Sequence record: MK250019.1
Length of the DNA: 64,000 nucleotides
Direction: 5' to 3' (one strand)
Below the pieces are notes generated by a model, which saw only the letters and a list, made by a program, of their open reading frames with translations, did not search any database and had not been told where the DNA came from. The translations under genes were made by a program, and so were the position numbers. The number at the start of each line of letters is the position of its first letter. Within the stretch, counting starts at the first letter, position 1. Shown here piece by piece: positions 32,401-57,812 of the stretch.

Positions 32401-32920
32401 TATTTCCTCCGCTTGCAGGAATTAAATTTGTAGTAATACTTGCATTATCTAATTTAGTTACATACTTATCACGTTTTGTTTGCGTTACAGTAACTGTTAT
32501 AGAATAGCTTCCAGTTTCATCTGTATATTGTGCAGTATCTGTATATGTTCTGTCAGATGTTGCATTATCACGTTTTCCAAAAGTAAATGTAAATCCATCT
32601 TCTTTATTTCCTGTTGTATTTACTCTACAATCAGATGCTATTCCGCTAAATGATGGTATCAAATAATGTTTTTCAGTAACATGTGATATAACAAATCCTT
32701 CTCTAACTGTATTAGTTCTTTCAACCCAACATTTACAGTTGACTGTTGTTCCACCTTCCCATGATATAGATGGTATTGTTTGAGGCTCTTTATGTGTAGT
32801 CCATTTTCCATATGAAACTGTTTTCTTTACATAGAAACGTCTGGAAGTTTTCTGACCTTCCCAACACACACGTTGTTTTTTCTATACATCAACCGCTTTA
32901 TTATTATTTTTTATAATCAT
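29468..32920 (-). CDS. 1150-aa Thr/Ser-rich beta-repeat protein with Listeria-Bacteroides (Flg_new/InlB B-like) repeats; probable virion adhesin or decoration protein (code 15)
   Basis: ATG 32920 and track ORFs 32066..32869, 30644..31018 and 29468..29863 are in one frame ending in TAG. Repeats include PTRTGYSFKGW, PVKTGYTFNGW and TKTGNTFLGWY. Confidence 0.8.
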
Positions 32921-32943: not shown

Positions 32944-33960
32944 TTAGAACTAATCTTTATAAGCATTGTATGTTGCTATAATATCTTTCAAATGAATAGT
33001 TGGGAATTTTTGTAGTTTTCTTAATATATTAATAAAATCTTCTTTACTACTCATATTAATACGATAACTACCATATCTTCCATATTGACGTGTATAAGTT
33101 TTATTATATATTTTACGTCCTAATATAATAGTTAATAATATGTCATCATTAAACTATAATTGTAAATCTTTTATATTTCTATTCTTCGCACATATAAATA
33201 AAGCTGCTAATCGTGCAACCATCTTATCTGCCTTTGTAATCTTATCAAAACCACTGAAATTTCTTGTATCTATACATTTATTCATACGGTCAATATCTTT
33301 CTGAACTACTTTATATACTTTTCCTGTACATGTTAATTCATCTGTAATTCTCTATGTATTAAATACTTGTTCAACAGATTCCATTAATACTTCACCTATC
33401 TATTTTTGATACTCATTAATATCAAAATATGTCTTATTATAAGATTCAATAAATTTATTAACTGGTGCAGTATAAGAAGAACTTTGATTAATACGTAAAA
33501 CTATTTTATCATTAACATCAGGAAATTTAACACACCATGCACGAAATTCTCTAGATTTATTTCTATATACTGCTTCGTATGGAATTATATAAATTTCAAA
33601 TGTGAAACTACCACCAATAACACATTTAAAATAACAACTGTTCGCCCTTTGAACTGATATATTACGTTGTTCATTATTAAACTAATCACAATCAATAGTA
33701 AAAGGAAGTTCGCTATGTTTCTGAACAGCATACATTATATCAGTAATAGTATCTAATACATTATTAACAAGATCGTATTTATTGATGAAATATTCATTTA
33801 CTTCATCTATATTATCACATTGTGCTAATGATGTAATTTTGACATTATCATTAATCATTTGAGAAACTTCCTATGTATCAGAATCTGTATCATCAACATA
33901 TATATCATTGAAATCATCATCAAATAAACTTTCGAGTAATTTCTTTATATTCTTATTCAT
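32944..33960 (-). CDS. 338-aa protein (code 15), absent from the ORF track
   Basis: Manual translation from ATG 33960 to TAA 32944 has only TAG interruptions. Leader KKLLESLFDDDFND. Confidence 0.75.
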
Positions 33961-34036
33961 ATAATAATTAAAATGTATTTTATTATTTATTTTTAGATAA
34001 TAATTCATGAAATATTTTTTTAATTAAAATATTATA

Positions 34037-34046
34037 TGTATCTTTG
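34037..34046 (+). promoter_or_regulatory. Bacteroidota-type -7 promoter element heading the unit that includes the TonB-dependent receptor
   Basis: TGTATCTTTG, intergenic. Confidence 0.75.
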
Positions 34047-34076
34047 AGTCACATAATAATTAATGAATAATATAAT

Positions 34077-34451
34077 ATGGTATTAAATATAGACGATTTT
34101 GAAGTATTGAAATTTTATGGGTATACAAGTCTAATACCTATAAATGCTCGTATTAATGAAGTGTCATCAATAGATGATAATCCTTGTGAACAGCTTCGTT
34201 ATAAAAAGTTAGAATCCTTTTATAATAAGGTAATTGAAAAAGCAAAGGAAAAATGTACAAATAAAAGTTTTCAGTATTGTCATTTTGAAGATAATAAATG
34301 TGTATTTTGTTTATCACATATTAAAACAGGTCATATTATCTATATAGGTAAATATGATTTTGAAATATCGATTGGTCTTGATTTTAAACAGCGTTTTGGT
34401 CCATCATATAATTTCTTATTTAATAAAGAATCATATAAGAATGAAGAGTAA
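34077..34451 (+). CDS. hypothetical protein
   Basis: 124-aa ORF. Confidence 0.6.
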   Translation: MVLNIDDFEVLKFYGYTSLIPINARINEVSSIDDNPCEQLRYKKLESFYNKVIEKAKEKCTNKSFQYCHFEDNKCVFCLSHIKTGHIIYIGKYDFEISIGLDFKQRFGPSYNFLFNKESYKNEE

Positions 34452-34581
34452 AAAATTTTTATCTAATTTAAATAATATAGAAACTTGCAAGAATTCATTG
34501 GTATTTCTTGCTATGGTATTTCTTATTATTTTAACATATGCAGGTATCATATGGTTTTCAGATTATTTGAATAATTATTAA
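34441..34581 (+). CDS. small membrane protein
   Basis: ATG 34441 (MKSKKF...) with one TM segment. Confidence 0.45.
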   Translation: MKSKKFLSNLNNIETCKNSLVFLAMVFLIILTYAGIIWFSDYLNNY

Positions 34582-34593
34582 AATTAAATACGT

Positions 34594-34926
34594 ATGGTTA
34601 TACATAAAGCAGAAAAATGTAATATTAATAATGTATCAGAGAATAAAATACATGATAGTACATCAGGTTATAATAGTTTAATTATATTTTTTATCATTAC
34701 TGTAATTACGGCAGTTGTATATGCAATAACAGTTTATCCTGCTGCATGTTCAAGAGAATCTGTAATTACAAATAAAGATACAGAAACAAAATTTAAAATG
34801 ATATTGAGAGACAAATATATTGATAATGTATTTCTTGAAAATATTAGTCAAAATTCATGGAATTCATTAGATGTATATGATTCAAATATGAAATCTCATA
34901 AAATTATTTGGAAAGAAGTAAAATAA
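34594..34926 (+). CDS. membrane protein
   Basis: 110 aa with one TM helix. Confidence 0.55.
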   Translation: MVIHKAEKCNINNVSENKIHDSTSGYNSLIIFFIITVITAVVYAITVYPAACSRESVITNKDTETKFKMILRDKYIDNVFLENISQNSWNSLDVYDSNMKSHKIIWKEVK

Positions 34927-34980
34927 TAAAGTAAAAAGAAAATATATTTAATAACTATTAATTTTAATAAAAAATAAAAA

Positions 34981-37050
34981 ATGAAGAATTTTATTTTGTG
35001 TTTGCTCATTTCATTTGTGAGCGTTTTTAATTCTTATGCAGACACTGTAACAGATACATTGACTGCATTGAAGTTGAAGGAAGTTACCGTAACTTCTTTG
35101 TATCGAAATAATGTACAGACTGGTAGTATGATTAATACATCTTCTATTAAGATGATGAATCATGGTCAGGGTACAGATTATGTACTTTCTACATTGCCTA
35201 ATATTTATGCATATAATGATAATGGTACGCAAATGGGTTATTGTTATTTCCGTATGCGTGGTATGGGTCAGGAACGTATGAATGTTACATTGGATGGAAT
35301 GCCTTGGAATGAAGCTGAAGATTTTGGTTGTTATTTCAGTAATTCTCCTGATCTTATGTCTAGTTTGCATTCTATTAAGGTAGAAAAAGGTGCATCAGTA
35401 ACTAATAACGGTACAGCTGCATATGCTGGTAATGTTTCTCTGGAATCAGTAGATTTGAGAAAAGATACAGATTCATGGTTTGATATTGGTTATGGTTCAT
35501 TTAATTCATCACGTGTAAGTGGCGTTTATAATATGGGATTGAAGAACCATTGGGGATTGCATGTTCGTGCAACATCACAGCAAACTGATGGCTATAAGGA
35601 AAATACATATAATAATTCAAAGTCAATTACACTTAAGACTGGTTATTTCTTTAATGATAAGCATTCGCTTGATTTCTTGACAATGACTGGTTATCATCGT
35701 AATGGTCAAGGTTTTATGGGTCTTACAGAAGATATGATTCCTAAGCATCCTACACCATTTAAGCAAATGAAGTCTGGTAATCGTCAGCAGGAAACAGATG
35801 ATTTCTTGACAACTTATAATAGATTTCAATACAAGGGAATTCTATCAGATAAGGTATTCTTGTCATCATCATTGTATTGGCAACATCAGACAGGTAATTA
35901 TCGTATTGGATGGGATGATCCTTCACGACCTACTGGAAGTGTATTGAATAATTATCATCTTAATTATAATCTTACAGGATTTAACACAGTAATTAAGTAT
36001 TATCCAGCTAATAATCTTTCACTTACAACTGGAGTAAATGCATATGTTTATCATAGACGTCATAAGGGATATGATATTGCAAACTCTGATAGTATTATTA
36101 CAGCATGGAAGAATCCAGGACTTACTCCTTATTATGATAATGCAGGAACAAAACCAGATGTAAATGTATTTGCAAATGTAAAGTATCAACCAATTAATAA
36201 GTTTACTATTGATGCTGCACTTCAATATCGTTATACATCACTTCATTATCGTGTAAATACACCAGCTATTGGTATTAATGGTGATTCTGATTTCAATCAT
36301 GACTGGAATTTTATGAATTACAGTTTTGGACTTACATATGATATTGATAAGTATTCAAAGGTATATGCACGTTATGCAGTCACAAACCGTGAGCCTTCCA
36401 GAACTGATATGTTCGGAGGTGAATATCGTACAGATGAATCTGAAATGAATACAAAGTCAGAGCGCGTACATGATGTTGAACTTGGTTATGAAATTCGTAA
36501 TAATAAGATTAATTTCAATATTAACGGTTTTTATATGAATTTTAGTAATGAACTTGTTGCAACAGGTGAACTTTCATCAATGAATGGTCTTCCTCTCCAT
36601 AAGCAGCATGATTCATATCGACTTGGTTTGGAACTTGCGATGGATTATAATCCTGTTAATACATTGCATCTTATTGCAAATGCTTCATGGTCAGAGAATA
36701 AGTTGAAGAACATTAATGGAAAGGAAATGAATCATACATTCTCACCATCATCTACATTGTTTGCTGAAGCAAATTATACAGTTAATAAGATTAAGTTCGG
36801 TGTAAATACAAATTTCCGTTCATCTATGTATATGGATATTTATAATAATCATCAGCTTAAGGAAAACCTTACACTTAATGCATATGTTAATGCACGAGTA
36901 TCAAAGATTGTAGAACTTAGTTTGAATCTTAATAATATTACGAATCGTTTGAATTTCTCTAACGGATCAGTTGATATTCCATCAGATACAGCATATTATT
37001 TGGTTGATTCACCATTTAATATGTTTGCGACAGCTAAGTTTCACTTTTAA
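34981..37050 (+). CDS. TonB-dependent outer membrane receptor, similar to Bacteroidota vitamin (thiamine-type) transporters
   Basis: Signal peptide, TonB-box-like LKEVTVT, plug GYCYFRMRG..RMNVTLDGMPWNEAED and SIKVEKG, barrel segments, and terminal Phe (ATAKFHF). Confidence 0.9.
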   Translation: MKNFILCLLISFVSVFNSYADTVTDTLTALKLKEVTVTSLYRNNVQTGSMINTSSIKMMNHGQGTDYVLSTLPNIYAYNDNGTQMGYCYFRMRGMGQERMNVTLDGMPWNEAEDFGCYFSNSPDLMSSLHSIKVEKGASVTNNGTAAYAGNVSLESVDLRKDTDSWFDIGYGSFNSSRVSGVYNMGLKNHWGLHVRATSQQTDGYKENTYNNSKSITLKTGYFFNDKHSLDFLTMTGYHRNGQGFMGLTEDMIPKHPTPFKQMKSGNRQQETDDFLTTYNRFQYKGILSDKVFLSSSLYWQHQTGNYRIGWDDPSRPTGSVLNNYHLNYNLTGFNTVIKYYPANNLSLTTGVNAYVYHRRHKGYDIANSDSIITAWKNPGLTPYYDNAGTKPDVNVFANVKYQPINKFTIDAALQYRYTSLHYRVNTPAIGINGDSDFNHDWNFMNYSFGLTYDIDKYSKVYARYAVTNREPSRTDMFGGEYRTDESEMNTKSERVHDVELGYEIRNNKINFNINGFYMNFSNELVATGELSSMNGLPLHKQHDSYRLGLELAMDYNPVNTLHLIANASWSENKLKNINGKEMNHTFSPSSTLFAEANYTVNKIKFGVNTNFRSSMYMDIYNNHQLKENLTLNAYVNARVSKIVELSLNLNNITNRLNFSNGSVDIPSDTAYYLVDSPFNMFATAKFHF

Positions 37051-37055
37051 ATAAA

Positions 37056-37094
37056 AATGGGTGATTAAATATTTCTGATATTTAATCACCCATT
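37056..37094. terminator. intrinsic terminator hairpin after the TBDR gene
   Basis: AATGGGTGATTAAATAT / ATATTTAATCACCCATT inverted repeat. Confidence 0.75.
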
Positions 37095-37174
37095 AATTAT
37101 TTCATATTTATCAATAATTATAAATTAATTATAAATAAGATAATGAAAATATAAAGAATGATTTATTTAGAAAA

Positions 37175-38452
37175 ATGAGTAAATGGAAATTAAATGAAAA
37201 TAGTATAAACGAATTTTTATGGACATGTGCAGGTGTTAATAAGAATATATTAAGATTATATCCGAGTGAATATGCAAAATATGCAGGTAGTGGAGGAACT
37301 ATTTTATTTACTGCTATGATGGCATTTATATCAGGTAGTTATGCAATGTTTTTTGTATTCAGTAATGCTATATTATCACTGATCTTTGGTATATTCTGGG
37401 CATTACTTATATTTAACCTTGACAGATTTATTGTTAATTCAATGCATACTGATGGTAAAGACACATTAAGTTGGAAAAAAATTCAAACGGCAATGCCACG
37501 TATAATTATGGCTATATTTTTAGGTATTGTTATTTCAACACCACTTGAAATGAAGATATTTAATGATAGAATAGAATCATAGTTACTAAAAGATAATATA
37601 GAACGAATAAATTCAGCAAAGAATGAATCATCAGATTATAAGACAATATCATTATTACAAGCAGAATAGAACCAATTGACAAAAGATCGAAAACAATTGG
37701 TAGATGATTTACAGAAAGCATAGAAAGAACTGAAGGAAGAAGCAGAAGGAAATGCATTATCTGGTATTGCAGGGCATGGAACTATATATAGAGATAAAGA
37801 AACATATGTTAATCAATGTAAACAATCATTATAGGAATGGGATCTTCTTCATAAAGAACGGTTGACAACTGTATAGAAACGTATTGATGAAGTTAATAAA
37901 CATATTGAAAAATTTGAAGGTAAAATAGACGGGTTAAGAGAAGATGGTTTCAGTGCAAGGTATGAAGCTTTTTCAAATCTTAAAGAAGCAAATAATTCAT
38001 TAGCGATGGTATCATTCATGATAACAATGTTATTCATTATTATAGAAGTTACACCTACATTTTTTAAACTTATTATGACATCAGGACCATATGAAGAACA
38101 TTTATAGATAGAAAATTATAAAATAACTGCATATGTTACTAAAGAGAAAAATGGTATTGATACAGAATTAAAAATAGATGATTATAATAATAAAGAAAAA
38201 TTAAAAGCTGTTATTAAACAAGATGAACCTATTATTGATGTAACAGATGTATCAGTAAAACCAATTGTATATTCGGCTATATAGCCGTTAACATTAGAAT
38301 CCGAGCAAGAACCTGAAGAAGTTCCATATATGAAGTCTAATACATCTATTATAACAACACCTGTTGCAACAAAGAAATTAGAATTTAAGAAAAATGAGAA
38401 AGGACAAATTATGTTAGATTTCTCATCAAGACCTAAAAAATTAAATAAATGA
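37175..38452 (+). CDS. DUF4407-like membrane protein (code 15)
   Basis: LWTCAG, KYAGSGGTILFTA, FNLDRFIV and PLEMKIF. Read-through of several TAG gives 425 aa with a coiled coil and a second TM, ending TGA 38452. Confidence 0.8.
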
Positions 38453-38515
38453 AATAAAAATAATATCCATTAAGAAAAAAAACTTAGTGGATATTTTTTT
38501 ATATAAAGAATTATA

Positions 38516-38525
38516 TGTATCTTTG
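38516..38525 (+). promoter_or_regulatory. Bacteroidota-type -7 promoter element
   Basis: TGTATCTTTG, intergenic. Confidence 0.75.
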
Positions 38526-38561
38526 TATTGTAATTAAATAACAATTTAAATAATAAAGAAT

Positions 38562-39569
38562 ATGAGTGAATTAATGTTTAAGAGTAAGAATGTAACACCA
38601 CAGTTGAATACTTATGTTATTAAGGTAACAGGTAAGTATAATGATCATCTACCATGGGAAACAAATATTATTAATGTAGAGGCAGATCGCATGAATAATT
38701 TTGTGTTGTTATTTCTTGCATATGTTGGTAACAGAAATTGGCAGCATAAATGGAAGAATTCTACATTCGGCGAGAATTTTAAGAAGGGACCACTGCAGAC
38801 ATATCTAGGTGCTTTTACCGAAGATACACATTATCCATGTATGGACCTTATGTGGAATGATGTTGTTTCAGTCAACATTAATTATGTTAATAATAACGGT
38901 ACATACATTTTGTGTGAACTGCCTGATGTAGAAGAATTGTATGATACTGAGGAGGATTTCCTTAAGGAACTTAAGTCACAGTTTGATGAATTTAATAAGA
39001 ATGATCCTCGTGATGTTTATGAAGATGAAGGAATTGAGATTGTTGATTCATATGAGCTTGAGCTTGTAAGAAATGTTCTTCGTTCTACTGGTAAGTGGGA
39101 TAATGATGAAATTGATAATCTGTTTTGGGTTGATCGTGAGATTGGTTTTAGTTCATTGGTTGCACGTACTTCTACAGATGAAAATATTCTTAAAGTATGT
39201 AAGCAGGAACATGCTAAGAGTGCAACAGGTGTTGAGTATAATGGATTTAAACCAGAAACACTCGAAAAGATTAAGACCGCTATTAGTGGAACAAATCTTC
39301 CAGAGGAAACTAAGACATTTGTAATTGACATTTGTTCTAAGTATAATTCAAAGAATATGTTGAGTGAATCTGAGAAGGAAGATCTTAAGAATATCATGGA
39401 AACATATAATTTGGTAAATTATTCATATGGATGGATTGGCCCAGATGGTTGGAGTGGTATTTACCTTGAGCATGTGATAGATCCAGAGATGATTGATTTC
39501 GATGATTATTCAGAGAATTCAGTTATTAAGTATGAGGGTGAAACATATATTATTCATGAAGGAGATTAA
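38562..39569 (+). CDS. hypothetical acidic protein
   Basis: 335-aa ORF. Confidence 0.7.
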   Translation: MSELMFKSKNVTPQLNTYVIKVTGKYNDHLPWETNIINVEADRMNNFVLLFLAYVGNRNWQHKWKNSTFGENFKKGPLQTYLGAFTEDTHYPCMDLMWNDVVSVNINYVNNNGTYILCELPDVEELYDTEEDFLKELKSQFDEFNKNDPRDVYEDEGIEIVDSYELELVRNVLRSTGKWDNDEIDNLFWVDREIGFSSLVARTSTDENILKVCKQEHAKSATGVEYNGFKPETLEKIKTAISGTNLPEETKTFVIDICSKYNSKNMLSESEKEDLKNIMETYNLVNYSYGWIGPDGWSGIYLEHVIDPEMIDFDDYSENSVIKYEGETYIIHEGD

Positions 39570-39572
39570 TTT

Positions 39573-39995
39573 ATGTTAATTATTCTATCAATAGTATTAA
39601 TTATTGTAGGATTATTTCTTGGAATTTTAATAGGTACTTTAGGATCATTTGGTGATTCTGAAATACCTATTAAAGAAGATAAAATAATCAAGAGATGTTT
39701 GTTATTTAATATAGCATCTCGGTGTGATAAAATTATACTTGTATGTTGTACACCATTCGGATGGTTAGGAATTCTTTTATTATTTGTATGTTGTTTTGTA
39801 TTTCAACATATTATAGGAATTATGTTTATTAGTCCTTTACCTATGATGGAATTTCTTAATACATTTGAAGACAAAATATATAGTTTTGCACTACTATATT
39901 TAGTACCTATGTTTGGTGGTTATTTTATAGGTTATAATTATATGAATAATTTTATTAAACGAATAGAAAAAGAAGAACATGAAGAAAGGAACTAA
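39573..39995 (+). CDS. membrane protein
   Basis: Three hydrophobic segments. Confidence 0.6.
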   Translation: MLIILSIVLIIVGLFLGILIGTLGSFGDSEIPIKEDKIIKRCLLFNIASRCDKIILVCCTPFGWLGILLLFVCCFVFQHIIGIMFISPLPMMEFLNTFEDKIYSFALLYLVPMFGGYFIGYNYMNNFIKRIEKEEHEERN

Positions 39996-40473
39996 ATTTT
40001 ATGTTATATTAGGTTATAATACAGAAACAGAAGCCTGGTATGGATATGTAGAAAATTCTTTTTCTATGGGTGCAGATAAAAATAGAATTAGAACATTTTC
40101 TACATGTAGAGCAGATTATCCTTGGAAAGATAGATCATTTTCAGAGAGAAAACGAATAGCGAAAGCATATTTGAAGAAACATGGTTATAGATGTAATTAT
40201 GCTCGTGATTATATTATAGATGCAAAGATGAATCCTAATTCACCAAATCAATGGATTTATTTTTATTTGCGAGATATTGTAGACAATCTTAATAAAAAAC
40301 ATTATAATAATTGTTATTGGAAAGTATATAGAGTAAATTCTAAGTTTTGTCCTATTAATGTAAATATGAATGAATATTACAAAACATTAGTAAATAAGAA
40401 ATTTAGGAAGTCTCTTGACAAATTTCAATTAAGAAATCAAGAATTTTCTGTAAAGGAAGTTTCAAAAGATTAA
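39979..40473 (+). CDS. hypothetical basic protein
   Basis: 164-aa ORF. Confidence 0.6.
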   Translation: MKKGTKFYVILGYNTETEAWYGYVENSFSMGADKNRIRTFSTCRADYPWKDRSFSERKRIAKAYLKKHGYRCNYARDYIIDAKMNPNSPNQWIYFYLRDIVDNLNKKHYNNCYWKVYRVNSKFCPINVNMNEYYKTLVNKKFRKSLDKFQLRNQEFSVKEVSKD

Positions 40474-40481
40474 AAATATAT

Positions 40482-40734
40482 CGGTACGGCTCTAAAGGAG
40501 AGAGCATCATTTATGATTAATGATGACGAAGATTTGTTCGTAAGTTAATCTTTACTAAGAGAATATACAATATTTAGTTATATAGAAGTAATTTAATTGT
40601 TATAATGCGAATACAATTTTATATGAAACTATATATGTCATTTATGAGATTATAGTGAAGAATAGCATTTACAGTAACTATAATAAGATGATATAAACAA
40701 TATAACTTCTGTGGTTCGATTCCACACGTACTGA
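40482..40734 (+). ncRNA. tRNA-like RNA with a ~175-nt insertion in the anticodon arm
   Basis: Acceptor CGGTACG/CGTACTG, D stem GCTC/GAGC, stem ATCAT/ATGAT and T arm TGTGG-TTCGATT-CCACA. Confidence 0.6.
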
Positions 40735-40753
40735 CTAATAAACATATAACATT

Positions 40754-40972
40754 ATGAAAGAAGAAATTAAATTCTTAGGTAAAACACCAAGAGAAATTGC
40801 AGAACGTTACTTCAATAAATCATATGAAGGTAAAGAACGATATGATATTTTAGTTGAAGGCTTTATTGAGGGATTTAATTATCTATTTCCTCATTATGAT
40901 ATAGCTAATACTTTGGTTGAAACATTTGAACGAATTAAAGAATTAGAAAATAAAGATAAAAAAGATTCATAA
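40754..40972 (+). CDS. hypothetical protein
   Basis: 72-aa ORF between the RNA elements. Confidence 0.55.
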   Translation: MKEEIKFLGKTPREIAERYFNKSYEGKERYDILVEGFIEGFNYLFPHYDIANTLVETFERIKELENKDKKDS

Positions 40973-40997
40973 TTATTTTTTTATTTGAAATAAAATA

Positions 40998-41007
40998 TGT
41001 ATCTTTG
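40998..41007 (+). promoter_or_regulatory. Bacteroidota-type -7 promoter element heading an ORF-free RNA unit
   Basis: TGTATCTTTG with no credible ORF for the following 1.1 kb. Confidence 0.7.
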
Positions 41008-41223
41008 TATTGTAAATAATGAACACCTATAAGTGTTAAGTAACATAAGGATGGAAATCTTATGGTTCGTAAGTAGTAATATCGAATAGTCCGCATAATA
41101 GGAACATGTCATTATTTTAACATTTATATAAGAATATACTACATGTCTTATATGAGCGTCAGGAGTATTGTAACAGAGTCGACGTATTTACATTTTTAGA
41201 GGCGCAGTTTTTAAATCTGACTA

Positions 41224-41257
41224 TTCTACGTAAAGTAGTGTTCTATGTAAAGTAGTG
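41224..41257 (+). repeat. tandem 17-nt repeat TTCTA(C/T)GTAAAGTAGTG x2
   Basis: 41224-41240 and 41241-41257 differ at one base. Confidence 0.8.
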
Positions 41258-41339
41258 AAGTGCAAGATACGGCGTCAGTACAAGTCTATATAATAAGTTG
41301 CAAATAAAAATAGAAACTGTTAAAATTCGTATCTAATTT

Positions 41340-41511
41340 GTCTGTATTTCACAATGGTTAATGAGGTACATGAAAAGTGATTTGGAAGAATCATTATAAA
41401 CATATTATGATTAAGATAACGTTCAACTAAGCTATATAATAATAGTAAGTACAGCGCTGAAAATATATGTTTATATGTATTGCGGTTGTGGTTCGATTCC
41501 ACATACAGACA
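41340..41511 (+). ncRNA. tRNA-like RNA with a ~103-nt insertion in the anticodon loop
   Basis: Perfect 7-bp acceptor GTCTGTA/TACAGAC, D loop with TGG, stem GTACAT/ATGTAT and the same 17-nt T arm as 40710-40726. Confidence 0.7.
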
Positions 41512-41515
41512 CGAC

Positions 41516-42025
41516 TTATATTAATGATGAAAAGTCTGCAATTAACAAAATATAAAAACATCTTAATGTACTGTTGATTATATGTTTTAATTTTGTTAAC
41601 TAAGAGATTCTTGTAAATTATAAAAATTTACAAATCGAGGGGAACGCATAACGGCAATTATGTTAGTACTTGGCGTTTAATGAAATGAATATGTATATTT
41701 GCCGATGTGCATATGAGTGACATTAAATGATAAAATTATAATAGTGTAGCGGTTCGCACGCCCGTTGGTAAAACGGGAAGGGTTTATGTTTGAAAGCATA
41801 TTAGGGGTTCGACTCCCGCTTATAAACAATTAAATTACATAATGTTCTCACGAAGAGCGAGCATCGGAAGGTGAGCAATTTAGAAAGATGTTTAAGAGTG
41901 ATCATATTAAATTGATTTCTAACAGAAATACGGTGACGTAGGAGCTGAAAAAGAACAAACGTATGGTAATGTTAGCATTATGTATTTAAAAAATATTAGT
42001 CCTCACAGACTTTACATTTTTTATA
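41516..42025 (+). ncRNA. candidate ~500-nt structured RNA
   Basis: Closing helix AAAGTCTG (41531-38)/CAGACTTT (42006-13). Internal helices include TTAACAAAAT/ATTTTGTTAA and TACATAATG/CATTATGTA. No ORF. Confidence 0.5.
41735..41827 (+). tRNA. atypical tRNA-Tyr-like (GTA) domain with a long variable arm
   Basis: D arm GTGT-AGCGGTTC-GCAC, anticodon arm CCCGT-TGGTAAA-ACGGG and T loop TTCGACT. Deviations: G33, only 3 bp in the T stem and a mismatched 1-72 pair. Confidence 0.45.
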
Positions 42026-42050
42026 ACTTTAAAATTTTGAATTTAATATT

Positions 42051-42085
42051 AAATCCGATGCTTGTAATAAGTATCGGATTTTTTT
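42051..42085 (+). terminator. intrinsic terminator closing the RNA unit
   Basis: AAATCCGATGCTT-GTAAT-AAGTATCGGATTT followed by a T run. Confidence 0.8.
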
Positions 42086-42100
42086 AATTCATAAAAAATA

Positions 42101-42110
42101 TGTATCTTTG
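42101..42110 (+). promoter_or_regulatory. Bacteroidota-type -7 promoter element upstream of nadR-pnuC
   Basis: TGTATCTTTG, intergenic. Confidence 0.75.
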
Positions 42111-42140
42111 TAATATATTAAATAATAATTAAATAATTAA

Positions 42141-43301
42141 ATGATTAAGAATATAGGAATTTGTTTTGGCGGTTATTGTCCTATGCATCAGGGACATCTT
42201 GATCTTATAATGAAAGCAAAGAAAGAAAATGATATTTGTTATGTGGTTGTTTGTGGTTATACAGATGAACCACGAGGTAATGAATTAGGTCTTAATATTA
42301 ATAATAGAAAAAGACTTATTAAAGAGTTTTTTAAAAATGATGAACTTATTCGAGTTCTTACTGTAAATGATACAGAATTAGGTATTGATGAAAGTATGTC
42401 TGAACATAATTGGAAAGTATGGACAGATTATGTAAAATATCAAATTACAGATGATCTTTTGGGTGGAGGTCCGACATTTCCATTTAGTCCTGATGAAAGG
42501 ATTGAAGCGCATGAATTGAAACTTACATTCTATGTTGGTGAAAAGTTCTATGTTGAATCATTGAATAAATTAAATATTAATGCAGTGTTAGTTGGTTACG
42601 ATGAGAATTCTCCATCTAATAGAAGTAATGATATATCAGCAACATATATTAGACAAAATCCTCAATATTATTGGGATAAGATTGTATCAACATTTAAACC
42701 TGCATTAACAAAGAAAATTCTTGTATTAGGTACAGCATCAGAAGGGAAATCAACACTTGTTAAAGATATTGGTAATTATTTTAATATACCATATACAACA
42801 GAATTCGGTAGGGATTATATGGAGAAACATTGTATGTTAGATCCTGATATTACTGTAAATGATTTTGTTGAATTCCTTATTGGACAGAGACAATATTATT
42901 TTGATGCTTTGAATGATAAAGGAAATAAGGGCGTTATCATTTCAGATACTGATAATCTCGTTACACTTATGTATGCAAAAGCATATGTATCTGATAATAA
43001 TATGCAAATTACTGAAGATGAATATAACAATATATTGAAACCACTTGCAAAATCATTACAAACAGGTGTTTCATGGGATGTAATTTATCTTATCAAACCG
43101 CATAATAAATTTGTTGATGATGGAACACGTTACATGAATCAATCTTCAATAGATGAGAGAATGAAGAATTATAAAATTCTTTTATCATTACTTGAAGAGT
43201 TCGGTTTACTTGATAAAGTAATTGAATTGAATGGTTCTTATATGGATCATTTTAATTATGTTAAGGATTATATCACAAAATTATATGATAAAGAAAATTA
43301 A
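42141..43301 (+). CDS. nadR: NadR-type bifunctional NMN adenylyltransferase / ribosylnicotinamide kinase (no HTH)
   Basis: FGGYCPMHQGH (HxGH), ISATYIR, P-loop GTASEGKSTL, EFGRDY and SDTD. Confidence 0.9.
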   Translation: MIKNIGICFGGYCPMHQGHLDLIMKAKKENDICYVVVCGYTDEPRGNELGLNINNRKRLIKEFFKNDELIRVLTVNDTELGIDESMSEHNWKVWTDYVKYQITDDLLGGGPTFPFSPDERIEAHELKLTFYVGEKFYVESLNKLNINAVLVGYDENSPSNRSNDISATYIRQNPQYYWDKIVSTFKPALTKKILVLGTASEGKSTLVKDIGNYFNIPYTTEFGRDYMEKHCMLDPDITVNDFVEFLIGQRQYYFDALNDKGNKGVIISDTDNLVTLMYAKAYVSDNNMQITEDEYNNILKPLAKSLQTGVSWDVIYLIKPHNKFVDDGTRYMNQSSIDERMKNYKILLSLLEEFGLLDKVIELNGSYMDHFNYVKDYITKLYDKEN

Positions 43302-43950
43302 TAATATATTATATTCAGAGTTTATAGAAGGAAGAAATATTAATGAACATTTGTTTATGCTCATTGGTATTTTCCTTCAATTAATTGCATGGTATATAAC
43401 TAAAGATTCATTGATTTCTTTAATATCAGGTGTAACTGGTATTATATCTGTTATATTATGTTCACAAAGAAAGATTTCATTTTATTTCTTCGGCTTTATA
43501 CAATTAGGAACATATATGTATCTTGCATGGCAGCAAAGATTTTATGGTGAATTAATAGAGAATATATTTTACATTATTACTATGTTAATAGGTATTGTAG
43601 TATGGTTAAAAAATTATAATACTGAAGAACAAATAGTAGAATCTAAAAGACTTTCTGATAGGTTATTCTATATAATATGTAGTATAATGGTGTTTATCTG
43701 TGTATTATTTGGTTATTATATGAAATACTTTACAGATAATACACAACCATTTATGGATTCATTTTCAACAGTACCTGCATTTATAGCACAGACATTGTTA
43801 ATGTTACGATATAGAGAACAATGGATATTCTGGATTATAATTGATGTTGTTTCTATATTCATGTGGATGTTTGCTGATAATTGGATAATGGTTATTCAAT
43901 TTATATTTTGGACAATGAATTGCATATATGGTTATAGAAAATGGAAATAA
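43285..43950 (+). CDS. pnuC: PnuC-family nicotinamide riboside transporter
   Basis: Multi-TM protein with ATG 43285 overlapping the nadR end. Motifs PFMDSFST, AQTLLMLRYREQWIFWIIIDVVSI and YGYRKW. Confidence 0.9.
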   Translation: MIKKINNILYSEFIEGRNINEHLFMLIGIFLQLIAWYITKDSLISLISGVTGIISVILCSQRKISFYFFGFIQLGTYMYLAWQQRFYGELIENIFYIITMLIGIVVWLKNYNTEEQIVESKRLSDRLFYIICSIMVFICVLFGYYMKYFTDNTQPFMDSFSTVPAFIAQTLLMLRYREQWIFWIIIDVVSIFMWMFADNWIMVIQFIFWTMNCIYGYRKWK

Positions 43951-43965
43951 TAAAAATAAAATAAT

Positions 43966-44211
43966 ATGACATTTGTTATTATAGTAATAGTTATTTGCTT
44001 AACTGTATATGGTATTATGGCATCTAAACATAATGCAGAAGAAAGTAAAGCATTTTGGGGTGATCATTCAGATTCATCTGATGTTAAGAAATTAAAGTCA
44101 AGAATGAAACTTTTGATTGATAGAGTAGATTTACTTGAGGAACGAATTAATAAGTTAGATGGACAGAGTTTAAAATCAAGAATTGATAGAAAAACATTTA
44201 ATAGCAATTAA
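43966..44211 (+). CDS. small membrane-anchored coiled-coil protein
   Basis: N-terminal TM helix, then a coiled coil. Confidence 0.55.
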   Translation: MTFVIIVIVICLTVYGIMASKHNAEESKAFWGDHSDSSDVKKLKSRMKLLIDRVDLLEERINKLDGQSLKSRIDRKTFNSN

Positions 44212-44214
44212 TAT

Positions 44215-44682
44215 ATGAAAGCAGAAAGAACAAATTTTGAAGTTTTTGATTGGATGAAAGAACATCAAAAAGAGTATAATTATAGTGATGAATTTATTAA
44301 TGCATATAAGGACTGTTATTTTTTGAAACGTCTCGAAGGAAAAGTATTTAAAGGTGAATTTTGTGGATATAAAGTAACACCTGATAATTCAGATAAATCT
44401 TATTTTGTAGAAGAAGGAATTAGAGGATGTGAACGAGGATTTTTTACTGTACTTGATAATAAACTTATTAAACTTGAATTTGATTCAGTACAGGATGAAT
44501 TGTGGTTTAGTAATAAGTATAAGAAAAATGAGAATTCAATTATAGAAAAGTATATCAATCCTAAATTGAAATATCTTACAGAATTCTTGAAACTTGAAAC
44601 ACTTACAGATAATGAAAGAATGATGATTAATGATCATATTCAATCATTAGAGTTTATTATTAATTCACTTTATAAAATTTAA
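44215..44682 (+). CDS. hypothetical protein
   Basis: 155-aa ORF. Confidence 0.6.
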   Translation: MKAERTNFEVFDWMKEHQKEYNYSDEFINAYKDCYFLKRLEGKVFKGEFCGYKVTPDNSDKSYFVEEGIRGCERGFFTVLDNKLIKLEFDSVQDELWFSNKYKKNENSIIEKYINPKLKYLTEFLKLETLTDNERMMINDHIQSLEFIINSLYKI

Positions 44683-44880
44683 TTTTATTTAATATGAGTT
44701 TTCTTACATATTTTTTAATTGCTTATGGTATTATTTCAACCATTTCTATTTGTGTATTTGCATATGAAATAAAACATGCACGTAATATTGATTCTAATGC
44801 ATGTTTTTTAAGAGGTGATATATCAAAAGATGCATTTAATAATAAAACAAAGTAATTAATATATTAAAATTATAAGATTC

Positions 44881-45642
44881 ATGGCGTATATAGATAAAAC
44901 CTATATAGTTGATTATCAGCAGTTTAAAGAAGTTCGAGACTGGTGTAAAGGTAAGATTGTTGAACTTCCTAATGGCCTTAAATATCATGCAGAGAATTTT
45001 TTGAATGATAAAGATATGTCAGAAGAGTATTTCAATAATTGGAAGAATGAAATTATTGAAAATCGAATGAGGACTTATGGAGAGACATATGAAAAAGCAT
45101 ATAAAAATGCAGAAATTCCATTATGGAATACACCATATTACTTTGATATATGGCTTATAAAGAATTGTCCTATACAATTTATACAGGATCGACTTAAATA
45201 TCAATATGATGATGAATATGAGCAGATTAAAAATGGGACATCATCATATGATACATATAAGAGAAATGGTCTTGGAAAGAATTTTCATTATAAAGTAATT
45301 CGCAAACCAAATTGGAACCCACGTTATAAATTCACTTATGTTGATCGACTCGGTAATGATAAGTGTTATAAGGAAAATCAAAAACCGTGGTGGCTTATCA
45401 CTATTGAAGATACTAAAACAGTAAATCCAATTTCATGGTGGGTAAATACTGAACATAATTATTGGACATGTTCAGAAGAAGGACTTCCATTTAATAGTAA
45501 TATGCTGGATATAAAGAGGAAGAATCTTAATATTCATGCTATCATCAGAATGATTAAGAAATGGGATTTACCTACCGGCTCACAAGTTAAGGTATTAAAT
45601 AGATATTTCAATTACGGTTGGATTATTAATATTAAAAAATAA
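44881..45642 (+). CDS. hypothetical protein
   Basis: 253-aa ORF followed by a hairpin at about 45647-45685. Confidence 0.65.
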   Translation: MAYIDKTYIVDYQQFKEVRDWCKGKIVELPNGLKYHAENFLNDKDMSEEYFNNWKNEIIENRMRTYGETYEKAYKNAEIPLWNTPYYFDIWLIKNCPIQFIQDRLKYQYDDEYEQIKNGTSSYDTYKRNGLGKNFHYKVIRKPNWNPRYKFTYVDRLGNDKCYKENQKPWWLITIEDTKTVNPISWWVNTEHNYWTCSEEGLPFNSNMLDIKRKNLNIHAIIRMIKKWDLPTGSQVKVLNRYFNYGWIINIKK

Positions 45643-45721
45643 AATTAGAAGGATGTTATTTAGACGGTTAAATAACATCCTTCTTTTATTATAAATATAA
45701 AAATAGGATTAATACTTATAT

Positions 45722-46771
45722 ATGAATAAACAAATCAAGCAATTGTTAGAAAATTTATTTGATGATTATGATGACTTAATATAGGATGATAATGATAATA
45801 TTGAAAAAGATTCCATAGGTAAGAAAATAACTGATGAAGATATAAAGAAAAAAGTAAAAGAATGGTTGCGTTATAATATTGCATCAAGTCCAGAAAATAA
45901 TAATATAGATAGAAATCTTACTTTTGAATATATTGATGACATACTTTATTGTAATTTACATTTTAATGGTTATATGACAGTATTTATGAGTGAAATACCT
46001 GATTATGTAAAGATTAATAAAATTACATGTAAAGATATTAAATTTAATAGTTTATATAATTTACCGAAGGAAATAGATGGAGATATGCTTATAGATGGTT
46101 ATAATCATACGAAATTAATTGGTAATTTCCCCGAAAAAATAGGTTGTTTAAAGATATGGAATTCAAAAATAAAATCATTGGAAGGACTCAATGATAATTG
46201 TGGTTCTATTGAATCATTAGAGATTGAGGCATGCAATAATTTCCAATATTTTATGGGTATTCCAGAAAATGTAGGACGTGTTTCTATACAAGAATGTAAT
46301 AAACTTCAAAATTTAATAGGATTACCAGAATCTGTTGATGATATAGAGTTAACAGATTTAAGGAAATTTTCAAGTTTAGAAGGATGTCCAAAAGAGTTAA
46401 AAGGAGATTTACGTATAACAGATTGTAAAAAATTATTATCATTAAAATATATTTCATCTTTAATCATAGGAGATTGTTCTGTTACGTATACAGGTATAGA
46501 ACATCTTGATATGGCTGAATCAAATACAAGAGTTATAGGAGACTTTAATGTTTCTAATAATAAGTTAGTTGATTTAAGTAATGGACCAGAAGATGTAAGA
46601 GGTAATTATGATTGTGCATATAACTCAAAATTGACATGTTTAAATGCGCAAGATACACTTATGTCTGGATATAAGAAAACATTTGATTGTACGAAAAATC
46701 GAAGACTAAAAACATTATAGGGATTACCTATAATGATTAAAGGAGATATAATAGTAAATACAGATTTATAA
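45722..46771 (+). CDS. leucine-rich-repeat-like protein, paralog 1 (code 15)
   Basis: ATG 45722 to TAA 46771 with 2 TAG. Repeats SLEGLN, NLIGLP and SLEGCP; leader LLENLFDDYDD. Confidence 0.75.
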
Positions 46772-46854
46772 AAATTAAATACGTCATACAAATAATATAT
46801 ATGTTATAAGTAAACTATTTGATAAATATAAAAATTATATTAAACAATTTATAT

Positions 46855-52842: not shown

Positions 52843-53494
52843 CTATATAATTTATGATGGTAAAGAATATAATAAATGTAGTGAAATAAGTTCTACTAGC
52901 AATGATAGTTTATTATAGAACTTTAAAAATATAATAACATCGATATGTAATAAAGATAATTTAGAAAAACATATGAGAGCTATACCAGATGATCCTCATT
53001 TAAAGAAATATTGGTATAATAATTAGAATGTAGATGAATATTGTATAAAAGTTGATTTAATAAGAGGACACGAAAATAAAAAAACAGGTTAGCATAAAGA
53101 TGATTTTTATACAATAATTTCTAATAATGAAAAAACAATATTATCATCAATAGGAAATTTTAAAGATTTAATTAAAAAGAAAAATAATTTAAATAAGAGA
53201 TTAATAAATTTCTATATTCCATCTATTAATTTAAATATTACAAATAATATTATAAATTATTTAAAAACAGATTTTTGTAGAGCAGGACTATTATTCCAAA
53301 AAATTAATACAAATATGTATCCAAATGTTTTTATTTATATTCCATGGTTTGATTTTTCTAATAATATATTTAGTAAAACACCATCAGAAATAGATGATTA
53401 TTTATTTACTAAATATAATATATCAAATGAAATAAGAAAACATATTGAAAAATTACTTCCGGATTATTATAATATAAGAAAAGGTAGAGATTAA
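52826..53494 (+). other. silent cassette 2: alternative TRD (222 aa)
   Basis: Open in code 15 from repeat B (INHNRRYIIYDGKEYNKC...LLPDYYNIRKGRD), in the same frame register as the main gene at repeat B. No start codon at its 5' end. Confidence 0.85.
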
Positions 53495-57774: not shown

Positions 57775-57812
57775 ATATGTCTATATAAGTTTAACTATAT
57801 AACTCTTCATAT

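What the first reader, a model, noticed from the sequence alone, without database searches (positions are those of the whole stretch)
34981..43950. Possible complete NAD-precursor import and rebuild route: TBDR, PnuC, NadR
Seen: TBDR, nadR and pnuC lie within 9 kb, all TAG-free and behind the same promoter motif; nadR and pnuC overlap. Known: PnuC imports nicotinamide riboside, and NadR converts it to NMN and then NAD. Several anti-phage systems (Thoeris, SIR2-domain systems) deplete NAD, and phage NAD-reconstitution pathways have been described that use other enzymes. Inference: this phage could refill NAD from outside the cell across both membranes, which would be a distinct counter-defence route.
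Basis: partly seen in the sequence, partly recalled or inferred. Interest (0 to 1): 0.7.

Follow-up and report, generated by a model that had tools for sequence, protein, structure and literature searches.

The report
Megaphage outer-membrane gate for NAD salvage
The Prevotella megaphage Lak-A2 carries the known phage NAD-rebuilding pair (PnuC importer plus NadR enzyme), and its outer-membrane TonB-dependent transporter stays next to that pair in distantly related giant phages and some bacteria, so it is probably the previously unrecognised outer-membrane step of this NAD-precursor route.

Summary
The window is Prevotella phage Lak-A2 (MK250019.1, 100% identity). A complete TonB-dependent transporter (TBDR, 34981-37050), an HTH-less NadR (42141-43301) and PnuC (43285-43950, overlapping nadR) are all free of in-frame TAG in a TAG-recoded genome. 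They lie in two units headed by the same host-type promoter class.

In 18 of 20 IMG/VR loci, and in all 19 GenBank phage genomes with a full-length homologue, NadR and PnuC follow the TBDR. Among 16 non-redundant loci these are the only gene families shared by nearly all. Two gene orders occur. In one 735-kb phage the TBDR sits inside a PncB-NadE-TBDR-PnuC-NadR-PncA island. Several Bacteroidota genomes have NrtR-TBDR-PnuC-NadR operons.

The PnuC+NadR pair as a phage counter-defence was published in August 2026 as NARP3, for enterobacterial phages, so that part is not new. I found no paper that links the TBDR to it; the Lak authors' table calls it an iron-complex receptor. No ligand, NAD rescue or anti-defence effect has been tested for Lak.

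Verdict: a new three-part variant of a known kind. Confidence that the TBDR belongs to the NAD route is about 0.7.

The parts
34007..34048 (+). Promoter of the TBDR unit: a T-run followed by the -7-type element at 34036-34048 (2 mismatches to ATGTATCTTTGTA).
   Evidence: It has the same architecture as the seven other copies in the window. The first ATG lies 28 nt downstream.
34077..34926 (+). Small TAG-free ORFs upstream of the TBDR in the same unit: 34077-34451 (124 aa), 34354-34581 (75 aa) and 34594-34926 (110 aa). The 110-aa ORF has one hydrophobic helix. Function unknown.
   Evidence: They have no Pfam or NCBIfam hits and are not conserved next to the TBDR in other phages.
34981..37050 (+). 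TonB-dependent outer-membrane transporter, 689 aa, the only one in the 541-kb genome. It has a signal peptide ending near SYA|DT, a TonB box LKEVTVTS, a plug, a modelled beta-barrel and a C-terminal ...KFHF.
   Evidence: Pfam Plug + barrel. Sequence features. AlphaFold model pLDDT 82.9, pTM 0.83. Foldseek TM 0.80/0.84 to PqqU/YncD and FecA. Single copy and no TonB_C in the genome. dN/dS 0.13 against the Lak-B type.
37056..37094 (+). Intrinsic-terminator-like hairpin (18-bp stem) closing the TBDR unit.
   Evidence: A 3,002-nt contig from a pig-gut RNA library lies on 34086-37056 and stops here.
42051..42112 (+). Terminator-like hairpin of the preceding tRNA stretch (42051-42081), followed by the nadR promoter, which is an exact ATGTATCTTTGTA at 42100-42112.
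42141..43301 (+). NadR-type bifunctional enzyme without an HTH domain: NMN adenylyltransferase plus ribosylnicotinamide kinase, 386 aa.
   Evidence: PDB 6GYE (L. lactis NadR) matches at 7.9e-50 over residues 3-376. Invariant GxxxPxHxGH, ISATxIR, Walker A GxxSxGKS, DTD and DGxR columns. dN/dS 0.17.
43285..43950 (+). PnuC nicotinamide-riboside transporter, 221 aa from M19 (the longest ORF starts at 43231). It overlaps the end of nadR by 17 nt.
   Evidence: PDB 4QTN matches at 2.2e-25, and the WxxWxxxD motif is present as QWIFWIIID. Start chosen by homology to Lak-B and to the 222-codon gene in the Lak-A1 table. dN/dS 0.18.

Best explanation
Lak-A2 encodes a three-step route that takes an NAD precursor from outside the cell and turns it into NAD inside an infected Prevotella.

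- Step 1 (inferred from gene linkage). The phage TBDR is exported by Sec, inserted into the host outer membrane and energised by the host TonB-ExbBD. It concentrates nicotinamide riboside, or NMN or NAD that periplasmic host nucleotidases trim to NR, into the periplasm.
- Step 2 (inferred from family membership). PnuC lets NR cross the inner membrane by facilitated diffusion.
- Step 3 (inferred from intact motifs). NadR traps NR by phosphorylating it to NMN in its kinase domain, then adenylates NMN to NAD in its NMNAT domain.

All three genes are readable in the standard code and sit behind host-type promoters. They can therefore be made early, before the phage switches TAG to an amino acid.

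The PnuC+NadR pair is a distant relative of the published NARP3 system. The TBDR is an added outer-membrane component. It is probably needed because Bacteroidota take up scarce vitamins through TonB-dependent transporters rather than through open porins.

The pay-off is a maintained NAD pool during a long megaphage infection, including when host NADase defences deplete it.
For: Identity and integrity of the parts.

Linkage in phages:
- TBDR homologues at 60%, 47% and 42% identity lie on phage-like contigs next to NadR and PnuC, in three different gene neighbourhoods.
- 18 of 20 IMG/VR loci have TBDR, then NadR, then PnuC on one strand, most of them contiguous.
- Among 16 non-redundant loci only TBDR (16), PnuC (16) and NadR (15) are shared by nearly all. 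The next family reaches 9.
- In 50,697 GenBank phage records, full-length homologues occur only in 15 Lak genomes and four genomes of 634-735 kb, and all of these have the pair adjacent. NadR alone occurs in 377 records.
- Two gene orders exist: TBDR-NadR-PnuC and TBDR-PnuC-NadR.
- The Lak-type NadR is only 22-27% identical to the NadRs of the other group, although the TBDR trees interleave. The linkage therefore survived a change of partner genes.
- The TBDR sits in wider NAD islands: PncB..NadE-TBDR..PnuC-NadR..PncA in LR756501, NUDIX-TBDR-PnuC-NadR in LR756502, and NadE 2.3 kb downstream in L008.

Linkage in bacteria:
- NrtR-TBDR-PnuC-NadR in two genomes.
- TBDR-PnuC-NadR in a Barnesiella MAG, and NrtR-ADP-ribosylglycohydrolase-TBDR-NadR in a Bacteroidaceae MAG.
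- Three further genomes in a phylum-wide sample.

Other support:
- Purifying selection on all three genes, dN/dS 0.13-0.18.
- An RNA-library contig spans the TBDR unit from promoter to terminator.
- A PnuC+NadR pair has been shown experimentally to import NR, rebuild NAD and rescue phages from Sir2-HerA and DSR1 (PMC13464706).
Against: - Nothing here measures transport, NAD levels or plaquing.
- The TBDR ligand is not identified. PDB relatives are 12-16% identical siderophore, PQQ and citrate transporters, and KEGG-style annotation calls it an iron-complex receptor.
- In Lak itself the TBDR is 5 kb from nadR, in a separate transcription unit, with a recoded gene, three unknown ORFs and a tRNA stretch between them.
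- Four bacterial homologues (L009, L010, L012, L013) and 25 longer paralogues have no NAD gene next to them.
- Many of the phage loci belong to related lineages, so they are not all independent events.
- NR (255 Da) is small enough to pass many porins, so the need for a TBDR is an argument, not a result.
- The RNA evidence is from assembled contigs, which cannot prove a transcript.
Confidence: 0.7

Rival explanations
1. The transport-and-salvage mechanism is the same, but its main benefit is supply rather than counter-defence. It would keep NAD available for a very large, slow replication programme (NAD-dependent DNA ligase, redox metabolism), whether or not the host has NADase defences.
For: - Lak-A2 encodes an NAD-dependent ligase and a Nampt.
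- Huge phages carry whole NAD islands that include PncB, NadE and PncA.
- A 2024 survey reads such genes as independent NAD supply (PMC11662467).
- Bacterial versions sit under NrtR as ordinary salvage operons.
Against: - NARP3 shows that the same pair does neutralise Sir2-HerA and DSR1.
- The two purposes do not exclude each other, and no data here separate them.
Confidence: 0.4
2. The TBDR takes up NMN or NAD, molecules too large or too scarce for porins, rather than NR. Host periplasmic nucleotidases would convert them to NR for PnuC, as in Haemophilus.
For: - TBDRs usually serve larger or scarce ligands.
- NUDIX and metallophosphatase genes lie next to the module in some loci (L008, L059).
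- The family-specific plug motif is acidic (NE.ED), which would suit a cationic pyridinium of any of the three molecules (inference).
Against: - No periplasmic nucleotidase was found in the Lak units.
- A precedent exists for a TBDR importing a 330-Da cofactor: PqqU, the best structural match by TM-score.
Confidence: 0.3
3. The TBDR is unrelated to NAD, for example an iron-complex receptor as automatically annotated. It would lie near nadR-pnuC only through inherited synteny of related phages.
For: - The K02014 annotation in the Lak-A1 table.
- A 5-kb separation and separate promoters in Lak.
- The closest solved structures are siderophore receptors.
- Some bacterial homologues lack NAD neighbours.
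Against: - Linkage persists across different flanks and across two gene orders.
- It persists with two distant NadR/PnuC types.
- It also holds in bacterial NrtR operons.
- No iron-uptake genes are adjacent in any locus examined.
Confidence: 0.07
4. The module is a thiamine system of the Bacteroides OMthi-PnuT type, not an NAD system.
For: - In Bacteroides, a TBDR (OMthi) is encoded near a Pnu-family transporter for thiamine (PMC5613172, PMC6977713).
- The Lak PnuC motif ends in D, as in PnuT, rather than N as in N. mucosa PnuC.
Against: - The partner enzyme is NadR with intact NMNAT and RNK motifs, and it overlaps pnuC. It is not a thiamine pyrophosphokinase.
- No TPP riboswitch or any Rfam hit lies in 33000-47000.
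- Neighbours elsewhere are NadE, PncA, PncB and NrtR.
- PnuC scores above the NR-transporter equivalog cut-off.
Confidence: 0.03
5. The phage TBDR changes the cell surface, for superinfection exclusion or as a decoy, rather than transporting a nutrient.
For: TBDRs are common phage receptors, and phages do manipulate them. Foldseek hits include FhuA complexes with T5 Llp and pb5.
Against: - The TonB box, the plug and the family-wide plug motif are conserved under purifying selection, as expected for a working transporter.
- This idea gives no reason for the strict linkage to NadR/PnuC.
Confidence: 0.03

Closest known systems
NARP3 (phage PnuC-like Bas30_87 + HTH-less NadR-like Bas30_86; Sci Adv 2026, PMC13464706)
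   Same: - A phage-borne, operonic pair of a PnuC-family transporter and a NadR enzyme that lacks the HTH domain.
- The predicted chemistry is the same: NR to NMN to NAD.
- In NARP3 the anti-defence effect was shown experimentally.
   Different: - NARP3 is described as a two-gene system of Enterobacteriaceae phages, and the paper makes no mention of an outer-membrane step.
- The Lak NadR is only about 24% identical to the T5-like phage NadRs.
- The Lak-type modules carry a conserved TonB-dependent transporter and occur in megaphages of 540-735 kb.
- Function in Lak is untested.
Bacteroides thetaiotaomicron thiamine uptake: OMthi (TBDR) + PnuT (PMC5613172, PMC6977713)
   Same: [quoted passage not shown] By my recollection, uptake is followed by trapping through a kinase (thiamine pyrophosphokinase); the papers were not read for this point.
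   Different: - The vitamin and trapping enzyme differ (thiamine, against NR with NadR).
- No riboswitch is present here.
- This module is phage-encoded.
Haemophilus influenzae NAD/NR uptake (OmpP2 porin, periplasmic NadN/e(P4), PnuC, NadR). Established knowledge; partly in PMC4081464, which was listed but not read.
   Same: A complete route from the external pyridine nucleotide to NAD across two membranes, ending in PnuC and NadR.
   Different: The outer-membrane step there is a porin plus periplasmic nucleotidases, not an energised TBDR. It is chromosomal, not viral.
Bacterial NrtR-TBDR-PnuC-NadR operons found here (L049, L050, L011, L015, L061, L062, L084)
   Same: The TBDR family is homologous (30-39% identity to Lak), has the same partners, and is of Bacteroidota origin. 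The TBDRs of the 634-735 kb phages group with L049 and L050.
   Different: - The gene order is TBDR-PnuC-NadR.
- The NadR and PnuC are of a type only 22-27% identical to Lak's.
- They are regulated by NrtR.
- They are rare: 5 of 401 sampled genomes of the phylum.
- I found no paper describing them.
PqqU/YncD, the TonB-dependent importer of the cofactor PQQ (PDB 9C4O, 6V81)
   Same: The best structural match by TM-score (0.80/0.84). It is a precedent for a TBDR that imports a small redox cofactor.
   Different: 16% sequence identity, and no shared ligand can be inferred.

Membership tests
NARP3-type phage NAD reconstitution (PnuC + NadR) | PnuC-family nicotinamide-riboside transporter | tested here: met
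   PF04973 3.4e-44; TIGR01528 136.9 bits against a cut-off of 42.45; PDB 4QTN 2.2e-25; WxxWxxxD motif present.
NARP3-type phage NAD reconstitution (PnuC + NadR) | NadR-like enzyme with NMNAT and RNK domains but no HTH domain | tested here: met
   CTP_transf_like + AAA_28. It aligns to PRK08099 from model position 64 only. HxGH, ISATxIR, Walker A and DTD motifs are invariant.
NARP3-type phage NAD reconstitution (PnuC + NadR) | The two genes form one operon on a phage genome | tested here: met
   Overlap of 17 nt (71 nt by the longest ORF), one promoter at 42100, in the complete phage genome MK250019.1.
NARP3-type phage NAD reconstitution (PnuC + NadR) | NR import, NR-to-NAD conversion and rescue from NADase defences | not testable with these tools
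   This needs uptake, enzyme and plaque assays. It has been shown only for Bas30_86/87.
NARP3-type phage NAD reconstitution (PnuC + NadR) | Close sequence kinship with Bas30_86/87 | tested here: inconclusive
   T5-like Salmonella and Escherichia phage NadRs are about 24% identical over 88% of the query. They are homologous but distant, and no joint tree was built.
TonB-dependent transporter (classical, about 22-strand barrel with plug) | Signal peptide, TonB box, plug domain, beta-barrel, C-terminal aromatic residue | tested here: met
   N-terminal hydrophobic leader; LKEVTVTS conserved across the family; Pfam Plug + barrel; AF2 model pTM 0.83 with full-length Foldseek matches (E to 4e-42); ends in F.
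TonB-dependent transporter (classical, about 22-strand barrel with plug) | A TonB-ExbBD energiser is available | tested here: inconclusive
   No TonB_C domain was found in the 541-kb phage genome, so the host system would have to serve. ExbB and ExbD were not searched, and no host genome was examined.
SusC-type TBDR (as phage TBDRs were labelled in PMC9723777) | N-terminal carboxypeptidase-regulatory-like domain, about 1000 aa, adjacent SusD lipoprotein | tested here: not met
   The protein is 689 aa with only Plug and barrel domains. Its neighbours are small unknown ORFs and DUF4407.
Iron-complex (siderophore) receptor, KEGG K02014, as in the Lak-A1 table | Kinship with characterised siderophore receptors, or iron-uptake gene context | tested here: not met
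   Best PDB sequence hit 2.6e-15 over the C-terminal barrel only. NCBIfam hits are far below cut-offs (35 against 800 bits). No iron genes lie in any of about 40 loci, whereas NAD genes do.
OMthi-PnuT thiamine uptake | TPP riboswitch and thiamine-specific partner genes | tested here: not met
   No Rfam hit in 33000-47000 at E<=0.1, and the partner is NadR.
NrtR regulon (bacterial NAD salvage control) | Adjacent Nudix + winged-helix NrtR regulator | tested here: not met
   It is present in the bacterial loci L011, L049 and L050. None is called among the ORFs of the Lak units, and only a plain NUDIX lies in LR756502.

The most novel reading that the evidence does not exclude
This TBDR family is a previously unrecognised class of TonB-dependent transporter dedicated to pyridine nucleosides or nucleotides (NR, NMN or NAD). 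Megaphages of Bacteroidota acquired it at least twice. They install their own energised outer-membrane gate in the host envelope, making a three-component, two-membrane version of NARP3 that lets them outrun NAD-depleting defences on precursors scavenged from the gut lumen.
Probability: 0.4. Interest if true: 0.8.

Novelty: new variant of a known kind. Interest (0 to 1): 0.62.

Why it matters
If the link holds, it does three things.
- It gives a substrate class, NAD precursors, to an uncharacterised TonB-dependent transporter family. It also reveals a rare NrtR-controlled outer-membrane step in bacterial NR salvage.
- It extends the newly described NARP3 counter-defence from a two-gene enterobacterial system to a three-gene, two-membrane system in the largest known gut phages. 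This shows how the same strategy is adapted to an envelope that relies on TonB-dependent uptake.
- It is a clear case of a virus encoding a complete outer-membrane nutrient transporter that must be assembled by host machinery during infection.

It also corrects an automatic annotation (iron-complex or SusC receptor, read as carbohydrate uptake) that has been carried in megaphage papers. The hypothesis can be tested directly with expression in Bacteroides and labelled NR, NMN and NAD.

Tried and rejected
- **Single-protein scan of bacterial genomes.** Scanning with the TBDR alone found nothing. An alignment was needed.
- **Rfam scan of 33000-47000.** It gave no hit at E<=0.1, so there is no riboswitch. 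It did not even recover the tRNA-Tyr that ARAGORN calls.
- **PDB sequence and fold searches.** They confirm the fold but cannot name a ligand.
- **Radical SAM gene as a fourth component: rejected.**
  - It follows pnuC in 9 related phage loci.
  - In Lak-A2 its homologue lies 13 kb away, at 21819-22697.
  - It is unrelated to the glycyl-radical activase that precedes the TBDR in four bacterial loci.
- **Small ORFs and genes lying between the TBDR and NadR as components: not supported.** T4_Y16D, YAcAr and the Lak ORFs at 34077-34926 and 38562-40473 are not conserved across loci.
- **Longer Bacteroidota TBDRs (700-830 aa, 33-40% identical to L049).** These have M28 peptidase, SET-domain or EPSP-synthase neighbours and no NAD genes. 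They are treated as paralogues outside the NAD-linked group.
- **ARAGORN with introns on 40400-42200.** It gave mutually inconsistent calls and the region was left unresolved.
- **Closest relatives of the Lak-type NadR.** The search returned only unnamed metagenome proteins, so its bacterial source stays open.
- **PnuC tree.** The script stopped on a labelling error and I did not repeat it.
- **Literature searches.** Searches for a phage-encoded or NAD-linked TonB-dependent transporter found nothing that makes the link. Supplementary files of the 2024 NAD-jumbo-phage paper are not held.
- **Not run.** No complex prediction was run, because no protein-protein contact is claimed.

Full report
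**What the window is.** The stretch 34981-43950 is 100% identical to Prevotella phage Lak-A2 (MK250019.1, 541,299 bp, circular, human faeces, Bangladesh). It is 98% identical to Lak-A1 and Lak-C1, and about 80% identical to the nine Lak-B genomes. The window has about 27% G+C. It shows the TAG recoding known for Lak phages: reading TAG as a residue joins fragments into ORFs of 1439, 1150 and 1007 aa with 27, 13 and 12 in-frame TAGs. The N runs at 1689-7472 and 63181-63299 were left alone.

**The observation.**
- *The TBDR.* 34981-37050 encodes a 689-aa TonB-dependent transporter with Plug and barrel domains.
  - It has a hydrophobic leader, a TonB box (LKEVTVTS) and a C-terminal Phe.
  - An AlphaFold model built on 18 homologues has pLDDT 82.9 and pTM 0.83. 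It matches solved transporters over their full length; the best TM-scores, 0.80/0.84, are to the PQQ importer PqqU/YncD.
- *NadR.* 42141-43301 encodes a 386-aa NadR without the HTH domain. It is most like Lactococcus lactis NadR (6GYE, 7.9e-50). The motifs of both the adenylyltransferase and the kinase domain are invariant in an alignment with seven relatives.
- *PnuC.* PnuC scores above the curated cut-off of the NR-transporter model and carries the WxxWxxxD ligand motif. Its homologous start is M19 at 43285. That gives 221 aa, matching the 222-codon gene in the Lak-A1 table, and a 17-nt overlap with nadR.
- *TAG-free.* All three genes have no in-frame TAG and end in TAA. The gene between them (DUF4407, 37175-38452) has seven TAGs.

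**Transcription units.**
- The 'same promoter motif' is real but general. It is a T-run followed by ATGTATCTTTGTA, and it contains the Bacteroidetes -7 element TAnnTTTG.
- It occurs eight times in the window, each 20-40 nt before an ATG or before the tRNA stretch.
- One copy, with 2 mismatches, lies at 34036. It heads a unit of three small ORFs plus the TBDR, and that unit ends at a strong hairpin at 37056-37094.
- An exact copy at 42100, just after another hairpin at 42051-42081, heads nadR-pnuC.
- The two units are therefore separate and lie 5 kb apart. They share a promoter class that the host RNA polymerase can presumably read (inference).
- In a pig-gut RNA library, one 3,002-nt contig of a 95%-identical relative lies on 34086-37056, from just behind the promoter to the first base of the terminator. 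DUF4407 is on a separate contig. This fits a discrete TBDR transcript, but assembled contigs cannot prove one.

**Is the TBDR tied to nadR-pnuC? Evidence from phages.**
- The 120 best TBDR homologues listed, all at least 41% identical, are almost all unnamed metagenome proteins.
- Three of them, at 60%, 47% and 42% identity, lie on phage-like contigs with quite different neighbours. These include topoisomerase and IF3, T4-type RNA ligase and DnaJ, and NUDIX and metallophosphatase. Each has NadR and PnuC within 0-3 genes. In one the three genes are contiguous.
- Of 20 IMG/VR viral loci with a homologue, 18 have NadR and then PnuC downstream on the same strand, mostly within 15 bp to 1.3 kb. The two exceptions are a truncated TBDR followed by PnuC, and a contig end.
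- Clustering every ORF of 16 non-redundant loci shows only three families present in nearly all: TBDR 16, PnuC 16 and NadR 15. The next family reaches 9.
- In 50,697 GenBank phage records, full-length homologues exist only in the 15 Lak genomes and in four genomes of 634-735 kb (LR745206, LR756501/3, LR756502). NadR-like genes occur in 377 records from many host groups.
- In the three fetched of those four giant genomes the order is TBDR-PnuC-NadR. LR756502 adds a NUDIX gene in front. In LR756501 the TBDR lies inside PncB..NadE-TBDR..PnuC-NadR..PncA.

**Evidence from bacteria.**
- An alignment-based scan found homologues at 36-39% identity in Bacteroidaceae and Barnesiella MAGs.
  - One has overlapping TBDR-PnuC-NadR genes.
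  - One has NrtR-ADP-ribosylglycohydrolase-TBDR-NadR.
  - Four have no NAD gene nearby and sit between dnaA and tgt, next to small porin-like genes.
- In samples of 301 genomes of the order and 401 of the phylum, the NAD-linked arrangement appeared in a handful of genomes.
  - Two carry NrtR-TBDR-PnuC-NadR, and one carries PnuC, a kinase-only NadR and the TBDR.
  - Twenty-five longer TBDRs with unrelated neighbours look like paralogues.

**Trees.**
- The TBDRs of Lak and its relatives form one clade (support 99). Its sister is the Bacteroidaceae/Barnesiella group.
- The TBDRs of the 634-735 kb phages group with the NrtR-operon bacteria. This implies at least two acquisitions.
- The Lak-type NadR is separated by a very long branch from all NadRs of the bacterial operons and of the giant LR phages, at 22-27% identity.
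- The two trees contain incompatible well-supported splits. Long branches call for caution. The simplest reading is that the TBDR became joined to two different NadR/PnuC pairs, which argues for function rather than inherited synteny.
- All three Lak genes are under purifying selection: dN/dS is 0.13, 0.17 and 0.18 against the Lak-B type.

**What is already known.**
- The Lak papers mention pnuC. Their supplementary table lists the three genes singly, with the TBDR as an 'iron complex outer membrane receptor'.
- A 2024 survey of 'NAD-jumbo phages' counts pnuC and nadR but does not mention TonB.
- A marine megaphage paper noted a 'SusC' TBDR in its own phage and in LR745206, and read it as carbohydrate uptake.
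- In August 2026 the PnuC + HTH-less NadR pair of an Escherichia phage was named NARP3. It was shown to import NR, rebuild NAD and rescue phages from Sir2-HerA and DSR1. That paper has no word on an outer-membrane step, Bacteroidota or megaphages.
- I found no paper linking a TonB-dependent transporter to NAD salvage in bacteria or in phages.
- The nearest architectural precedent is the OMthi-PnuT thiamine system of Bacteroides.

**Mechanism proposed.**
- Shown by sequence: the parts are complete, intact, conserved and linked.
- Inferred:
  - The TBDR is made early and inserted in the host outer membrane.
  - It is driven by host TonB, because none is encoded by the phage.
  - It concentrates NR, or NMN or NAD, into the periplasm.
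  - PnuC passes NR inward, and NadR traps it as NMN and makes NAD.
- Lak-A2 also has a Nampt elsewhere in the genome (PDB Nampt 6e-138). With the NMNAT domain of NadR this would also recycle nicotinamide, the NARP2 chemistry.
- Whether the selective benefit is counter-defence or plain supply cannot be settled here. A family-wide acidic plug motif (N110, E113, D114) is a candidate ligand site (inference).

**Verdict.** The import-and-rebuild module is well supported by comparative genomics. The counter-defence idea for PnuC+NadR is already published. The TBDR as a third, outer-membrane component is, as far as I could find, new. I file this as a new variant of a known kind, with interest 0.62.

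Noticed in passing
window 37175-38452 (+): A DUF4407 membrane-protein gene with 7 in-frame TAGs and a TGA stop sits between two TAG-free, promoter-headed units. It has its own terminator-like hairpin (38462-38495) and no copy of the promoter motif. Standard-code and recoded genes therefore alternate at a scale of about 1 kb.
   Followed up: partly
window 40480-42050 (+): A 1.6-kb stretch with almost no ORFs lies behind an exact promoter copy (40997). It holds tRNA-Tyr (41735-41827) and two further T-arm-like GGTTCGATTCCAC sequences near 40712 and 41489. ARAGORN in intron mode gives inconsistent calls, including one with a 327-nt intron and anticodon TTA, and Rfam finds nothing. These may be intron-containing or fragmented tRNAs.
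   Followed up: partly
window 21819-22697 (+): A radical SAM protein (Fer4_12 + Radical_SAM, called pflA in the Lak-A1 table) has homologues at 40-44% identity that lie immediately downstream of pnuC in 9 related phage loci. A radical SAM gene also follows NadR in LR745206. Its family is unclear, with weak hits to NrdG-, viperin- and QueE-like models.
   Followed up: partly
MK250019.1 about 128.9-130.5 kb (L055 1417-2997, -), outside the window: Lak-A2 encodes a 526-aa TAG-free nicotinamide phosphoribosyltransferase (Nampt/NadV). Together with the NMNAT domain of NadR it would give the NARP2-type nicotinamide-to-NAD route. No NadE or PncA was found in this genome.
   Followed up: yes
MK250019.1 254891-255442 (L056), outside the window: An NAD-dependent DNA ligase adenylation domain lies in a 703-aa open frame. 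This makes the phage itself an NAD consumer.
   Followed up: no
L058 (LR756501.1 416510-438513, reverse complement) 7085-15513: The 735-kb phage has an NAD island: PncB (7085-8260), NadE (9043-9978), TBDR (9992-12037), PnuC (12813-13382), NadR (13486-14466) and an isochorismatase/PncA-like gene (14839-15513).
   Followed up: yes
L049 6291-10738 and L050 6213-10530 (bacterial chromosomes G032, G035): Bacteroidota chromosomes carry NrtR-TBDR-PnuC-NadR operons. L011 adds an ADP-ribosylglycohydrolase. I found no description of an outer-membrane step in bacterial NR salvage in the papers searched.
   Followed up: partly
window 53491-57810 (-): A 1439-aa ORF is readable only with TAG as a residue (27 TAGs). 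It has a short match to a phage DNA methyltransferase family at residues 1108-1176. ORFs 29468-32920 (1150 aa, 13 TAGs) and 2949-5972 (1007 aa, 12 TAGs, interrupted by N runs) are similar cases without annotation.
   Followed up: no
window 45722-46771 (+): A 349-aa ORF with 2 in-frame TAGs has weak leucine-rich-repeat matches (EndoS LRR, and EspK/GogB-type LRR models at 1e-5, far below cut-offs). This is probably just an LRR protein.
   Followed up: no
window 15990-17906 and 25334-26758 (+): TAG-free topoisomerase II large and small subunit genes (PHROG 543 at 8e-155, PHROG 551 at 4e-106) lie in the same standard-code, promoter-headed class as the NAD genes.
   Followed up: no
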